Below are positions 21,901 to 39,900 of a stretch of DNA of 64,000 bases, one piece after another. A program made the position numbers and the translations under genes. The stretch covers positions 75,330,001 through 75,394,000 of the forward strand of contig OZ286469.1 in NCBI GenBank assembly GCA_965644265.1, read 5' to 3'. This DNA comes from Glycera tridactyla. Lineage: Eukaryota. Position 1 is the stretch's first letter. Each line of letters starts with the position of its first letter. The notes beneath the pieces are model-generated. The model saw only the letters and a program-made list of their open reading frames with translations. It searched no databases and was not told the DNA's origin.

Positions 21901-24900
21901 AAATACCCTCAATACAAATCTGATAATTCTGGCTTTTTCATTTGAGCAATGTGGACATAAATTGATGAATCAAGTCTACTTGTTGCATGCAACAAGAAAT
22001 ATTGAAGTAAAAAAAATAAATAGCGAAATACATATCGAAATATAAGAATTAGAGAACGATGAGAAAAAAAAGTCAGAGCAATAAATCACCAACCACAGAT
22101 TCATCGACGTTGAATATAGTTACAAGAAAAGCGAAATTTCTCCCAAATCTGAGACGCAACCTTCTTAAGCTGACCATATACCACAATCTATGGCAAAAAC
22201 AGCAGAAACAGTTCAAATACCGGACAAAATCTCCCTAACCAAATAGTCGGAAGTATGAATGTTCACCAACCTCCTCCTCCTCTTCTCCACCTAGTGGCCC
22301 TATTTTACCCAGTTTGATACCAGACAGAAGCCCACCTGACTTCTTGCGTTTTGTTGGTGGCTACATTAAATACATAAAAGATGATGGCATTCAATATAAT
22401 GATGCTTAATTGTGTATTCAGTGTTTCTTAGTCTCACTAAAGGAATGAACCGCATGGGTGAAAACCTGTAGAGAAAGAAGGAATGTGTGAGTGAAACTGA
22501 AACAGGCTTGGTGAGTTGTGTGAAGGTAAGAATGATAGCAGAAAATAAGCAATATGTACCTTTAGGGTCAGGTACTATTGAAATAACAGAGCTGTAATGC
22601 CGATCTGGACTCGGCCTAGCCATTAGCTGATCATACGAAGATAACCACCCAATCATATATGAACCAGTAGCCACCAAGGCTGAAATGAGTGGAGTTGCAA
22701 GGCTCTACATTAACAGGTGTAGTGCCAATTTGTGTATGTGCATGGGTGTGTGTATGTGCTTGGGTCTGTGTGTGTGCATGGGTGTGTGTGTAGAAAAATA
22801 AAAGAAAGTATACATGCACAACAAGTGTTGATTCGGAGTTTTTCGCAAAAACTGTGAAACAGCAAATTGCCATCCTCAATGTGAATGACGACTAAGTGTA
22901 TAGGTTTGGACAAAGTTGCACCATTCTGAGACTGCCACAAGACACTTATCCTGCCACCACCAATTTGCAGCCCCCAAAAAAGATAGAACTTTGTGACATC
23001 ATCCTAAATGGTCGAGATTTTGAGTTAGAAAGACAGAGTTCTGGGACTTTCTGTGCTACAAGATGAAATGAGAAGAAAGATAAGGTGAATCACACCCAGA
23101 GAGCTAATCTCAGCCCGCTTATTTTCAGCCATGTGTTGATGAGCTCACAGCTGTATTGGGGGAACTGCAATGCAACCAGACTGGCGCCAATGGATGATAA
23201 ATATGATTCACCTTTAATACCCTCCTGTAGCATATACTGCTGGGAGAAGTGACACAATACACTAGAATAATTGGGATAGAAACAAAGACTTCAAAACTGA
23301 CTTTCTTATGGAACTTTGCAATGGATTCCTGTGAAGCTGATACTCAAAACACTACATACCAAGAAACATGAGAGGGCTGGGATAGATTTAATAGATAACC
23401 ATGCAATGAATATTTTTTTCCCTATGCAGCATAATGGGAACCTCGGACACTGACATCTAATTATAAACTATGAAGGTTTTGAAGCAGGCCAGAATAAATG
23501 TCTGAACAAAAATGAATGAAGTGACAAAACAGAAAAGGTGAGCCGAATCGAAATTTCCAAACGGTGATGTTGCTGATCTTTGAAATTTCACCAGACATCA
23601 CCAACTTCAAAATTTCTCATCAAGCACATGCTAGGGTCCCATCCATGAATTTATCATCAAAATAACTTCTGGGGTCTTCAAATATACACCATTGACAGGG
23701 TACCAACTGAGATTTCACCCAAGATGGGATGGACACCCCCTTCTTCAATAGCATGTGTTCGCTGAGTAATTTCATCAGAATGTTGATACGAGGATTCAAA
23801 TTTGATCTTCAAAGAGTGAGCACAAATAAAGAACAAGATGCAAGACCTGTAAGGAACACTTCGAAACGATGTGGCAAGCAATTCTCAAACAACAAAATAA
23901 CCTGACATATGTCATCCTGAACCACCAAATGACATCATTTCACATTGACAATTCATGATTTGAAAGTGAGATAGGTCCTGGATTGGCCTGTTGGTAAGAA
24001 AAGAGTTTTTGGGTGAATCCACTGAGTTTAAATCACGGAGTTCCAGGCACAGTAGACTATCATAAAAGTCTTCCCGATTTGATAAATCTAAATATACCAC
24101 ACGATGGAATCTGGCATGCAGACTTCATTTGACTTTAGTCACATTCAATGTCAATTCAAACCTCTCAGACATTAAGAGTCTGAGGATATAATTTTGTCAT
24201 GATTCAATAGATTCAACGATATGCCACTCATGATATGATTCATTCTGCAATAGCTTTCACTCTGAAGCCAAGTCAAACTGCTTGGTTCTTGGTATGAAGC
24301 AATTTTGCAATCCTCTCACAAAAGGTTGAGATGGGGGAACAGTCAATGCTGATATATCATCGATGATGATTGGCTGTCTGGGTGAGGCAGGTACAGGAGC
24401 CACTGTGATTGGCCAGTTACAACTCGAGCGCAAAATACTGGCATGGTGCTTTTCCTGCTATCTAGACAATACTTCTTTGAATTTGTGGCTATTTTGAGCA
24501 TCATAAAAGATTTCCCTAAAAACAGTGCCACATTGCTCGATTCACAGAATGTATTGTTGTGTATGTTGATCACTTGCACCAATGCATCAGTGAATCACTT
24601 TCTCTCTTGACTGGTATCTATTATTGTTACATTCTCCCCCATATGGATGTAAGACATAACAGTACAGAAACTGAAGATCAGAATCAGGGTGTTCGATGAT
24701 GTCTCCGAGGGCTCAAAATGCCATGTGACAGATCATACATGTGCCACAAAACTTGACACAAACAACAGATATATTGGAAAGATGCACACAAATTTGGCAC
24801 AAAACAGACAATAGCCAACTGTTCTATTGGATTGGAAACATGGAAAAATATATAGAAAATTCCACACCAAACGTCGACCTACTCTTGACCGAGCTCGGCG

Positions 24901-36900: not shown

Positions 36901-39900
36901 NNNNNNNNNNNNTTCAGAGACATAAGTTTCTTCATGCCCAACCCGGAACATATCTGGTAACACATCACCTCAAAGTCCCTAATTTACCAATGTCATCCTT
37001 ACCCATTCCCAGTTCATCATCCACAAAGTTGTTCCAGTTGCTCTTGATTCATTTGAATCAGAGAGAGCTCTCACCATTTTTCCATAAGCATTGACAATAA
37101 CTGAGATTGATGATACCACTGAAGAAAGCATATGTCATGTGGTTCATAGGTGGAGCAAAATTTGATCATGGTTGATACATACTTTTGTTGCTTTGGAACC
37201 AAATATTAAAAATTTCTCAGAGATTACCAAGATGAATTCATGCCAAGGTCCACTGATACTCCTAAGACATCTTGATTGTCCAAGTGTTTCATGAAGAAGG
37301 TTAAGGTTTCTCAAGGTTTCACAGAAACCGTATCTTTTGATATCTGATCACCATTGTGTCAGCGGAAGCAACACTTTTCAGAATTCCGAGCACGATTGCT
37401 CTCTGCTGATCATTTGGATACTTTTGAGGGTATAAAGATCGTTAACAAATGTCACCATGATTTTTGAAATATCAGTTGTCACAGCCAAAATTGACATGCA
37501 TCAATTTTGGGACTGTGGGATGCTCAGATACGAGCTGATTCCTGCTAAAATCATATCAACTGATTTGGAATACTTATGACATACTGATAACTTTGGAAGC
37601 AGTTCTGGTCACATGATTGATGAGTCCTTGAAGCCACTGATCATCACATGACAAAGTCTGCTGTTAGAGTAGTTAGGATGTCATGATCATTTCAAAAAGC
37701 TCATTCAATGTGAGTTAATATGACCTGAACACATTTTTGGACAAATGGCAATCAGTCCTGTGAAACACTGGAATCAGAGACATGTTCACATGCAATGGAG
37801 AAGAGTCCTTGAGCTAGGTGGCAGCACGAGTTCACTGTTCCACCAGATGGCAGTTCCACATCTTATCTATTCCAGTCACATCGGAGATGTAGTGACCTAC
37901 TTTGAATTTGATCTTCCAGCGATCTGAGGTACCTCGCTCCTTCTTCTCCTTATATTTTTGTTCAAAAAATATGAATATTTGTTATATGATGCATCACCTG
38001 GGCATTAATAGAAGTACCTTTCTCATGAAAATACTCATTATTGACTGGTGCTGGCAGCAATATCTATCAGAGGACTGTTTTTTTTCAGCAGATTCATCAC
38101 TACAACCGGTTTGCTACACTACAGCTAGCACCTGACCTTGTTTGAAAAGGCAAGATAAACTTGCATTGATTCAGCATGAATTGCAATCTCTTATCAAATG
38201 TCCAACACAGTCCAAAGAAACTCAAAGTATCGCTGAATGAGTAAACTGGCTTTTCATGTCGGCTTGGTTCGTTCAAAATGACAACAACTGAGAAGCTGTC
38301 CACAATGCGTTTGGGATAGAAATACCTCAAACTCTTCTTAATGGCTTCTCGAATGAATGTCAGATTTCATGAGTGTCTTGGGTGTGGATTTCTGAGCAGC
38401 TTATTACAGTGTCATCACAATACCAAATACTAGTTGCTATGTGACAAGTCAGTCAGTAATCTATCCTGGAAATGTGAATGCCAGATGAGTGAGTGCTTCA
38501 ATATATGCATTACCATGGCTCTATGGTGAACACAATACTACAGCTGTAAAACATGTGATATGGCGGTGTGCTCAAAATGCCACCTGACCTTTCATTTCAA
38601 CATGGCAGACCTGTAAAACAATTCAATTATTAATGCCTAACAACAAATTCAAACAAAAAACCCTGCTAGCCTTGAACACTCTCAACACTACCAATATGGC
38701 TGCTGCTGCCATGAGAGGTGGTGTGACCTTGACCCACTGATGGCCAATCAGAATTGGGTGGGAGGAGCCTACACTGGTCACATGACTTCATACTTTCCTC
38801 CCTCTGCAAAATGTGTCAATTTCAATGCAAGATGGTTTGTGCATAAGTATTTCAATAGGTCAACATTTTTGAAAGCTGGAACAGCCTGCAGTAGTGCACT
38901 TGGGTACACATTTTCAGAATTTCGATCTCGATGTATTTTCCATCTTCTTTGGACAAGCAGCCCTAAGTGCTATACTTTTGCTGAAATCATACCTTAATGC
39001 ACCAACACCAGATCTGCAGACACTAAAGATTGGTGCAAAAGTCCCAAACATTTGTGGTATTGCATGCATATTTGTTGAGAAGATTTAGCTCATAGTGTTC
39101 CACGCTTGTGATGTGCACATCAACCAAATCCTTCTAAAATTGATCAGCATCATGTTCACTTCATGCTTTCCTTTTGTACCAAAGATATTGCATTCTGACT
39201 CAACCAGAATGTGACTGACGGAGGGAAAATGAAAGTGGAAACACCATGTGATGTAGCATAAATTCAAAATAATTTTGGTGAATGAAGGACCAGTGGTATC
39301 TGTATCAGGACCTCTAATTCCCCCAACCCTTCCTCATCACAACTTTGCATGATATCCACAACCAATTACAAACTACAGTCTCTTCAACATTCTTGTGGCA
39401 ATTATACTTTGTTCACAAATCAATTGTTGATCCTTCAAATATACAGAATTTCATTCGGAAAAAATGTGGAAGATGTGAACTTTCATCAACTATTGGAAAT
39501 ACTTAGCAATTCTGAGAATTGTGGATCATCGTATGATTTAGAGATCCTGTTTTCTGTATATCATGTATTGGGTTGAGTAATGGTGCTACATGCAATGAAC
39601 AGACCGTAGTTGGACAGGTTCCTCTACATATGTGGTATCCTCAGTTTTGTATAACAGAATACCATTGTCTCCTTGTATGGATTGAACAACAATAATCCTC
39701 GACGAATACACAGCCAGCAGACCTATAATCAACTCATCTATGAAGTTATTCTTCCAAAATTATTTCGCTATCCAAGTAGATAACGGTCATGGAAGCCTAT
39801 CAGATGAATGTGTATGTTTAATGATTCACCGATTGTGAGTTTCACACTATTTCAGCAGCTTCAAATCAATAGTGAGACAGGGTGTCCATTCAAAATAAGC

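What the first reader, a model, noticed from the sequence alone, without database searches (positions are those of the whole stretch)
22271..37948. Hidden array of short symmetric phase-0 cassette exons in the ferlin linker before the last two C2 domains
Seen: between the phase-0 donor at 45658 and the phase-0 acceptor at 18899 lie seven minus-strand segments with AG/GT borders and lengths divisible by 3: 37901-37948 (48 nt), 34351-34380 (30), 33314-33358 (45), 32744-32758 (15), 31665-31733 (69), 24883-24927 (45) and 22271-22360 (90). Phase 0 is the only phase open in all of them. Together they read [16 protein letters not shown]|[10 protein letters not shown]|[15 protein letters not shown]|GVVID|[23 protein letters not shown]|[15 protein letters not shown]|PPTKRKK...EEEEE. 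Several are CpG- or GC-rich islands in an AT-rich intron. Established: this position corresponds to dysferlin alternative exon 40a, which carries the calpain site that releases a two-C2+TM mini-ferlin. Inference: a combinatorial, polybasic linker module that could tune cleavage, lipid binding or calmodulin binding. Some candidates may be chance matches, and several are also open in phases 1 or 2.
Basis: partly seen in the sequence, partly recalled or inferred. Interest (0 to 1): 0.85.

Follow-up and report, generated by a model that had tools for sequence, protein, structure and literature searches.

The report
Small extra exons in ferlin intron
A long intron of an invertebrate ferlin (membrane-repair) gene, at the same place as human dysferlin's alternative exon 40a, holds one small coding exon proven by RNA and perhaps two more, but not the seven-exon array proposed.

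Summary
The seven segments exist exactly as described: AG/GT borders, lengths divisible by 3, the quoted peptides. But 1,023 segments on that strand of the intron meet the same bare criteria, so the list is not above chance by sequence alone.

**The gene.** It is a minus-strand dysferlin/myoferlin-type ferlin. The 26.8-kb intron (45657-18900) is phase 0 at both ends. It is the same intron that hosts dysferlin exon 40a, between Q1470 and E1471 in human.

**Candidate by candidate:**
- **31665-31733 (69 nt): real.** In RNA contigs of four public runs it is the only non-repeat part of the tested 6 kb that is spliced into a longer contig. It forms a perfect internal piece of a 750-nt contig.
- **33314-33358 and 34351-34380:** zero depth in all four runs.
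- **32744-32758 (15 nt):** too short for this test.
- **22271-22360 (90 nt): probable.** It matches in position, size, phase and charge layout the last small exon annotated in annelid, nemertean and mollusc orthologues. A profile of those exons does not recognise it.
- **24883-24927: possible.** It has exon-like CpG density and fair splice sites.
- **37901-37948:** weak and untested.

Oyster, amphibian and mammalian ferlin isoforms already show alternative inserts at this spot. This is a new member of a known kind. Whether the exons are alternative here is unknown.

The parts
45658..45737 (-). Upstream flanking exon (80 nt; ...[14 protein letters not shown]). It enters in phase 1 and its donor is phase 0.
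   Evidence: Read directly. The VIDMP motif aligns with HVIDMP of relatives.
18900..45657 (-). 26,758-nt phase-0 intron, positional equivalent of human DYSF intron 40 (host of exon 40a). It contains two assembly gaps (36694-36912, 42024-42172).
31665..31733 (-). Real 69-nt phase-0 exon ([23 protein letters not shown]; net charge +3)
   Evidence: X3 record 17 (750 nt) matches 31665-31734 at record positions 531-600 with 0 mismatches. The rest of the contig lies off the 6-kb stretch. There is depth in all four runs and the surrounding intron is silent. CpG density is 8.7 per 100 nt, against 1.28 for the intron.
22271..22360 (-). Probable 90-nt phase-0 exon (polybasic start, Gly/hydrophobic middle, EEEEE end). 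It would be the last small exon before the DWW exon.
   Evidence: Its position, size, phase and charge layout match exons in relatives: annotated in Paralvinella (102 nt) and Tubulanus (93 nt), inferred from isoform differences in oyster (87 nt), and unannotated in L001 (90 nt). It was not tested with RNA. A profile HMM of those exons does not detect it.
24883..24927 (-). Possible 45-nt phase-0 exon ([15 protein letters not shown])
   Evidence: CpG density is 8.9 per 100 nt, like the proven exon. It is the best candidate of 30 nt or more when splice score and CpG are combined: 12 of 1,266 pass. No RNA or orthologue evidence.
37901..37948 (-). Unsupported candidate (48 nt)
   Evidence: Acceptor score -10, rank 408 of 1,266. 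Not covered by the RNA test.
34351..34380 (-). Unsupported candidate (30 nt)
   Evidence: Zero contig depth in bin 34200-34399 in four runs. Rank 250.
33314..33358 (-). Unsupported candidate (45 nt)
   Evidence: Depth 0, 0.08, 0 and 0 in bin 33200-33399. No CpG.
32744..32758 (-). Untestable 15-nt candidate
   Evidence: Too short to be laid. Its last base (C) does not fit the extra matched G at 31734 in the X3 contig, so it is not the direct upstream partner of the proven exon there.
18789..18899 (-). Downstream flanking exon ([18 protein letters not shown]...), phase-0 acceptor
   Evidence: Aligns to human myoferlin 1499-1529 and dysferlin 1472-1502.

Best explanation
**What it is.** The window carries the 3' half of a dysferlin/myoferlin-type ferlin gene on the minus strand. 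The 26.8-kb intron between exon 45737-45658 and exon 18899-18789 is phase 0 at both ends. It is the positional equivalent of the human DYSF intron that holds alternative exon 40a. In the protein this is the surface-exposed beta6-beta7 subdomain of C2E, just before the C2F-C2G-TM module.

**What the intron holds.**
- It contains at least one real 69-nt phase-0 exon, 31665-31733 (shown by RNA).
- It probably contains a second, 22271-22360, of 90 nt (inferred from orthologous gene structure).
- It possibly contains a third, 24883-24927, of 45 nt (inferred from composition).
- The other four listed segments are most likely chance AG/GT open frames.

**How it probably works (inferred).** The real exons add 23-68 residues in frame, with net positive charge. 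They would form a flexible basic stretch, and the 90-nt one would add an acidic tail. Such inserts would change binding of acidic phospholipids or other partners, or protease access at the hinge whose cleavage in vertebrates releases a two-C2 mini-ferlin.

**Alternative or constitutive?** In the one contig shown (run X3) the 69-nt exon lies inside a longer transcript contig, so it is not a rare hidden form there. Whether it is ever skipped in this species is unknown.
For: **Ferlin identity**
- Nineteen collinear tblastn segments to annotated ferlins; Paralvinella gives 68% identity over 994 residues.
- Pfam Ferlin_C and C2 hits above their cut-offs.

**Same intron as exon 40a**
- The exon at 18899 aligns to dysferlin 1472-1502.
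- Exon 40a lies between Q1470 and E1471 (PMC11544258).
- Marsupial dysferlin isoforms differ by a 21-aa insert directly before EEEFVDWW.

**Exon 31665-31733**
- A 750-nt contig has it as an exact internal 70-letter piece, and there is depth in all four runs.
- The adjoining intron bins (30800-31599 and 31800-32999), and 34200-35799, have zero depth.
- The borders fit AG/GT only on the minus strand.

**Exon 22271-22360**
- Paralvinella has annotated 81-nt and 102-nt phase-0 exons in the equivalent 13.6-kb intron. Tubulanus has a 93-nt one.
- A related eukaryotic contig (L001) has a 90-nt AG/GT open segment with a polybasic start and a DDDDD end.
- Oyster isoforms carry a 29-aa or a 21-aa insert, or neither, at this spot.

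**CpG**
- Real exons have 4.8 CpG per 100 nt and the intron 1.28. The values are 8.7 for 31665-31733 and 8.9 for 24883-24927.
Against: - Only contigs, not reads, were available. They come from runs whose RNA nature is guessed by the tool. The flanks of the 750-nt contig were not shown, so its link to the ferlin exons is inferred: strand, phase, and the last base G of exon 45658 matching the extra letter at 31734.
- 22271-22360 has no RNA test. It scores -0.7 bits (rank 71 of 440) against a profile of the orthologous exons. It has low CpG (1.1 per 100 nt) and a splice rank of 62.
- No candidate peptide aligns better than shuffles to the equivalent introns of L001, L005 or Paralvinella.
- Zero contig depth does not exclude rare isoforms.
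Confidence: 0.7

Rival explanations
1. One reading: all seven segments are cassette exons used combinatorially to build a variable polybasic linker.
For: - All seven are frame-compatible.
- One is proven.
- Relatives show several alternative inserts at this site, with up to about 150-170 extra residues in Physella and Acanthaster isoforms.
Against: - 1,023 chance segments meet the same criteria.
- 33314-33358 and 34351-34380 have zero contig depth in four runs.
- 37901-37948 has a very poor acceptor.
- Annotated close relatives have one or two exons here, not seven.
Confidence: 0.04
2. Only 31665-31733 is real. The other six, including 22271-22360, are chance open frames.
For: - 22271-22360 is not recognised by the orthologue profile.
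- It has intron-like CpG.
- Its EEEEE end is a (GAG)n-like purine run that could be a simple repeat.
Against: - Every close relative examined has a 87-102-nt phase-0 exon as the last one before the DWW exon. These share the same basic-to-acidic layout and weak GTTTGT/GTTGGT-type donors.
- Its G+C is 0.51 against 0.36 in the flanks.
Confidence: 0.2
3. The real exons are ordinary constitutive exons of this gene. They seemed hidden only because the reader had no annotation, and there is no regulated cassette use in this species.
For: - The X3 contig runs unbroken through the 69-nt exon for 530 nt upstream and 150 nt downstream. A de Bruijn assembly usually breaks at frequent skip/include branches (inference about the assembler).
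- The single gene models of Paralvinella and Tubulanus include their equivalents.
Against: - Oysters, mammals and amphibians have annotated include/skip isoforms at exactly this junction.
- The exons are symmetric phase 0 with weak donors (GTACAG, GTTGGT), as is typical of regulated exons.
- The direct 45658->18899 join gives a linker like the short forms of Patella and Ostrea X18.
Confidence: 0.3

Closest known systems
Human/vertebrate dysferlin alternative exon 40a (Redpath et al. 2014, PMC4230592; Huang et al. 2024, PMC11544258)
   Same: - Same intron: phase 0, directly upstream of the acidic-[IV]DWWSK exon, inside the C2E beta6-beta7 subdomain.
- A short exon of a length divisible by 3 (63 nt in human).
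- It sits before the C2F-C2G-TM module.
   Different: - No sequence similarity beyond shuffles.
- Exon 40a is Ser/Thr/Pro-rich and not basic, whereas the exons here are net basic.
- Calpain cleavage and alternative use are shown for exon 40a and untested here.
Alternative inserts in Ostrea edulis myoferlin-like isoforms X3-X18, seen in NCBI's predicted isoform proteins, and in other oysters
   Same: - Same junction, between HVIEMP...KKAE and PDPVVDEEIDWW.
- Three states: a 29-aa basic/hydrophobic/acidic insert, a 21-aa basic helix-like insert, or neither.
- This is the same two-type layout as 31665-31733 plus 22271-22360.
   Different: - The oyster exons carry a conserved FPQLELP core that the window's 90-nt exon lacks.
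- In the oyster isoforms listed, each carries one insert or neither, never both. Here the usage is unknown.
Exons annotated in the equivalent intron of Paralvinella palmiformis (81 + 102 nt) and Tubulanus polymorphus (93 nt)
   Same: The closest available orthologues (68% and 64% identity). Their exons are small phase-0 exons in a long intron, basic first and ending acidic.
   Different: The peptides are not alignable beyond chance with the window's. No isoform information is available for these two species.
Mammalian myoferlin predicted isoforms with a 19-aa insert (CLSSMSTALGKMVSPTTVH) before LTEKEEEIVDWW
   Same: Same junction, with include/skip states.
   Different: The insert is not basic. 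These are predicted models only.

Membership tests
Ferlin family (dysferlin/myoferlin type) | C-terminal transmembrane anchor with a Ferlin_C region | tested here: met
   Pfam Ferlin_C, 44.1 bits (cut-off 29.4), on 995-846.
Ferlin family (dysferlin/myoferlin type) | Several C2 domains collinear with known ferlins | tested here: met
   Nineteen collinear tblastn segments to annotated ferlins. Pfam C2 hit at 22.3 bits against a cut-off of 22.
Ferlin family (dysferlin/myoferlin type) | FerI/FerA/FerB and DysF regions | not tested
   These lie upstream of the part of the gene held in the window.
Dysferlin exon-40a-type cassette exon | Lies in the phase-0 intron directly upstream of the acidic-[IV]DWWSK exon | tested here: met
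Dysferlin exon-40a-type cassette exon | Length divisible by 3, phase 0 on both sides, really spliced into mRNA | tested here: met
   Met for 31665-31733 only. The other six are not shown to be spliced.
Dysferlin exon-40a-type cassette exon | Alternatively included and skipped | tested here: inconclusive
   Only assembled contigs were available. One contig includes the exon and no skip form was visible.
Dysferlin exon-40a-type cassette exon | Carries the calpain cleavage site | not testable with these tools
   No predictor or assay was available.
Dysferlin exon-40a-type cassette exon | Sequence homology to exon 40a | tested here: not met
   Smith-Waterman scores lie within the shuffle range.
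Lophotrochozoan last-linker exon (FPQLELP type) | Last small phase-0 exon (87-102 nt) before the DWW exon, running from basic to acidic | tested here: met
   22271-22360 is 90 nt and phase 0, and runs from KRKK to EEEEE.
Lophotrochozoan last-linker exon (FPQLELP type) | Conserved [FL]G..K.[ST][FY]PQ.[ED]LP core | tested here: not met
   The profile HMM gives -0.7 bits, rank 71 of 440. No other segment of the intron matches either.

The most novel reading that the evidence does not exclude
The intron before the DWW exon is an ancient, metazoan-wide hotspot at which ferlins insert short phase-0 exons into the C2E beta6-beta7 surface subdomain. In invertebrates most of these inserts are basic. 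In this species three or more of them (31665-31733, 24883-24927, 22271-22360, perhaps others or ones hidden in the gaps) would be used combinatorially. That would tune membrane binding or cleavage at the hinge that releases the two-C2 mini-ferlin, and vertebrate exon 40a would be one derived member of an old module.
Probability: 0.2. Interest if true: 0.6.

Novelty: new member of a known kind. Interest (0 to 1): 0.4.

Why it matters
Dysferlin exon 40a controls calpain release of a mini-dysferlin used in membrane repair, and its evolutionary origin is unclear. Invertebrate ferlins carry real, frame-neutral, mostly basic small exons at the very same junction. Oysters, amphibians and mammals annotate include/skip variants there. 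Together this suggests the junction is an old site of regulated variation rather than a vertebrate novelty. It offers simple constructs to test, namely C2E with and without each insert, for lipid binding and for cleavage. For this genome, the practical result is a correction of the gene model: at least one exon, and probably two, inside a 26.8-kb intron.

Tried and rejected
- **Same-species protein or transcript.** Three protein searches and one exhaustive representative search found none. The best exon identity was 72-74%, and the closest full-length protein was Paralvinella at 68%.
- **Cross-species conservation of the intron.** tblastx against the equivalent introns of Paralvinella, Tubulanus and L001 gave only microsatellite matches. 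Smith-Waterman of each candidate peptide against the L001 and L005 introns stayed within shuffles. Even the RNA-proven exon is undetectable this way, so the test has no power at this distance.
- **Profile HMM of the orthologous last-linker exons.** It gave no hit anywhere in the intron.
- **Splice-site matrix.** It does not separate the candidates from chance and scores the proven exon at -2.7, so it is not a useful discriminator for these weak-site exons.
- **Repeat origin of the candidates.** None is repeated within the window.
- **Loci of other relatives.** Physella, Ostrea and Lineus isoforms are not on record, and the Haliotis gene is too long to fetch.
- **The search for related loci with the 37-aa exon.** The rerun with a Paralvinella piece gave only equally distant loci.
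- **The joint 29873->33639.** I rejected it as splicing. It has a 21-letter side, a non-canonical end, and lies in a highly repeated element.
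Full report
**Observation.** Each has AG upstream and GT downstream, a length divisible by 3, and the quoted translation. 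Phase 0 is the only phase open in all seven. The flanking splice sites are phase 0. Exon 45737-45658 (80 nt) follows a 169-nt exon (48789-48621) and ends ...CCA ATG|GTATGT. Exon 18899-18789 starts ttgcag|CAT GAT GAT.

Two assembly gaps, 36694-36912 and 42024-42172, lie in the intron and touch no candidate. I could not test continuity across them. For spliced exons the frame across a gap does not matter, but a gap could hide an exon.

**Chance level.** The stated criteria are weak.
- AG...GT, 15-90 nt, length divisible by 3 and open in phase 0 gives 1,023 segments on the minus strand of this intron and 682 on the plus strand.
- A matrix built from 13-14 secure junctions of this gene ranks the seven at 26, 28, 62, 77, 250, 408 and 446 of 1,266. 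Their scores are far below those of real exons and no better than the best plus-strand controls.
- Chance candidates average 10% Lys+Arg. About 4% reach 26% or more, so a reader could assemble a polybasic series by selection.
- One compositional signal does carry information. Secure exons of this gene have 4.8 CpG per 100 nt (observed/expected 0.79) against 1.28 (0.35) in the intron. 31665-31733 has 8.7 and 24883-24927 has 8.9. 22271-22360 has 1.1 and 33314-33358 has none.

**What the gene is.** Nineteen collinear tblastn segments match annotated ferlins. The best are Paralvinella palmiformis (68% over 994 residues) and Tubulanus polymorphus (64%), so the organism is a lophotrochozoan-like invertebrate. 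I did not identify it further. Pfam finds Ferlin_C and C2 above their cut-offs.

The exon at 18899 aligns to human myoferlin 1499-1529 and dysferlin 1472-1502. Dysferlin exon 40a is inserted between Q1470 and E1471 (PMC11544258). Marsupial dysferlin isoforms differ by a 21-residue insert directly before EEEFVDWW.

By current structural work the site is the beta6-beta7 subdomain of C2E. That subdomain is variable in length and lies on the protein surface (PMC9333456; PMC11544258).

**RNA evidence.** Five runs hold about 19-20% of the sampled words of the exon-rich stretch 1900-10400, as expected for exons alone. I was allowed one read-laying run of 6,000 letters. I chose 29800-35799, which holds four candidates.
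- **31665-31733.** In run X3 a 750-nt contig matches 31665-31734 at its positions 531-600 with no mismatch. The other 680 letters lie on nothing in the stretch. The bin 31600-31799 has depth in all four runs.
- **Surroundings.** Bins 30800-31599, 31800-32999 and 34200-35799 are empty, so genomic DNA carry-over is not the source.
- **Borders.** They are the predicted ones and are canonical only on the minus strand. The one extra matched letter (G at 31734) equals the last base of exon 45658.
- **Conclusion.** 31665-31733 is a real spliced exon.
- **33314-33358 and 34351-34380** have no depth.
- **32744-32758** is too short to be laid. Its last base (C) is also incompatible with being the direct upstream partner in that contig.
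- **Other depth in the stretch.** The heavy depth at 33009-33091 and 33635-33715 (and lower depth on to about 34199) comes from an abundant repeat: hundreds of contigs at 90-95% likeness. Low depth at 29800-30199 comes from short sides of such contigs. X1 also has a 166-nt unspliced contig at 30520-30685. None of this belongs to the gene model.
- **Limits.** Contigs drop rare variants, so absence is weak evidence. 37901-37948, 24883-24927 and 22271-22360 were outside the stretch.

**Relatives.** The junction is variable across animals.
- In Ostrea edulis, isoforms carry a 29-residue insert, a 21-residue basic insert, or nothing, between ...EEKKAE and PDPVVDEEIDWW.
- Mammalian myoferlin models carry or lack a 19-residue insert.
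- An axolotl dysferlin isoform adds a polybasic stretch as well as an exon-40a-like one.
- Echinoderm, hemichordate and snail isoforms have long basic inserts.

Gene structures that I could fetch show the following.
- Paralvinella has 81-nt and 102-nt phase-0 exons in a 13.6-kb intron.
- Tubulanus has one 93-nt exon.
- A compact orthologous eukaryotic contig from a metagenome assembly (L001) has AG/GT open segments of 75 and 90 nt. The second runs from KKK to DDDDD.

The window's pair mirrors this two-type layout in order, size, phase and charge. 31665-31733 is basic, and like the Haliotis insert it starts with LP. 22271-22360 runs from KRKK to EEEEE and has a GTTGGT donor like the GTTTGT of Tubulanus and L001.

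The similarity is architectural only. A profile of twelve orthologous last-linker exons gives 22271-22360 -0.7 bits, at rank 71 of 440. It finds nothing else in the intron. No candidate aligns beyond shuffles to the orthologous introns or to exon 40a. The RNA-proven exon is equally undetectable, so these negatives have little weight.

**Verdict per candidate (my estimates).**

| Candidate | Status | Probability real |
|---|---|---|
| 31665-31733 | real | about 0.95 |
| 22271-22360 | probable | about 0.65 |
| 24883-24927 | possible; the best candidate of 30 nt or more when splice score and CpG are combined, 12 of 1,266 pass | about 0.35 |
| 32744-32758 | unsupported | 0.1 or less |
| 34351-34380 | unsupported | 0.1 or less |
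| 37901-37948 | unsupported | 0.1 or less |
| 33314-33358 | unsupported | 0.1 or less |

**Mechanism.**
- *Shown:* a frame-neutral 23-residue basic insert (net +3) is spliced in at the exon-40a junction.
- *Inferred:* together with the 90-nt exon it lengthens a flexible surface loop of C2E by up to 53 residues. Basic stretches would be followed by an acidic run next to the conserved acidic-DWW segment. Such basic or basic-hydrophobic loops commonly bind acidic phospholipids. In vertebrates this hinge is where cleavage frees the C2F-C2G-TM module (PMC4230592).
- *Untested:* whether the inserts here alter lipid binding, partner binding or cleavage.
- *Alternative or constitutive:* this is open. 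The X3 contig runs unbroken through the exon, which argues that inclusion is the main form there. Symmetric phase, weak donors and the include/skip isoforms of relatives argue that skipping is possible.

**Novelty.** Alternative short exons at this junction are known for dysferlin and are present in automatic annotations of many invertebrates. Three full-text searches found no paper on them in invertebrates. The finding is a new member of a known kind, and the seven-exon array is not supported.

Noticed in passing
window 30448-30467 / 31561-31580, and 30299, 30321, 30464: A 20-nt inverted repeat (95% complementary, 1,093 nt apart) has one arm 85 nt downstream of the donor of the now RNA-proven exon 31665-31733. 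The other arm lies beside three minus-strand UGCAUG motifs. UGCAUG is enriched on both strands of the intron (29 and 23 against 5.8 expected), so the motif count alone is not specific.
   Followed up: partly
window 33009-33091 and 33635-33715: Two short elements are matched by hundreds of RNA contigs at 90-95% likeness, with summed depth up to about 20,000. This is an abundant transcribed repeat (SINE-like). 33011-33084 is itself a near-palindrome, 86% identical to its own reverse complement.
   Followed up: no
L001 (JAAUYG010272494.1) and L005 (JAAUYG010165398.1), assembly GCA_013332715.1: Two different compact ferlin loci of a eukaryote sit in a metagenome assembly. They are annotated with prokaryote-style gene calls that read through introns. 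One such product is the 172-aa P0340.
   Followed up: partly
window 48620-45738: The preceding intron is where oysters carry a further 42-residue alternative insert, between ...GVQG and GLVNG. I did not look for an equivalent exon here.
   Followed up: no
window 17186-11084, minus strand: Long open frames of a LINE-type retrotransposon (533, 685 and 288 aa, with endonuclease/reverse-transcriptase-like text) fill the intron between exons 17997 and 10400.
   Followed up: no
Proteins P0309 (Ambystoma) and P0329 (Pleurodeles): Salamander dysferlin isoforms carry a longer insert at the exon-40a junction. In axolotl it includes a polybasic FSRKKK stretch ahead of the exon-40a-like part.
   Followed up: no
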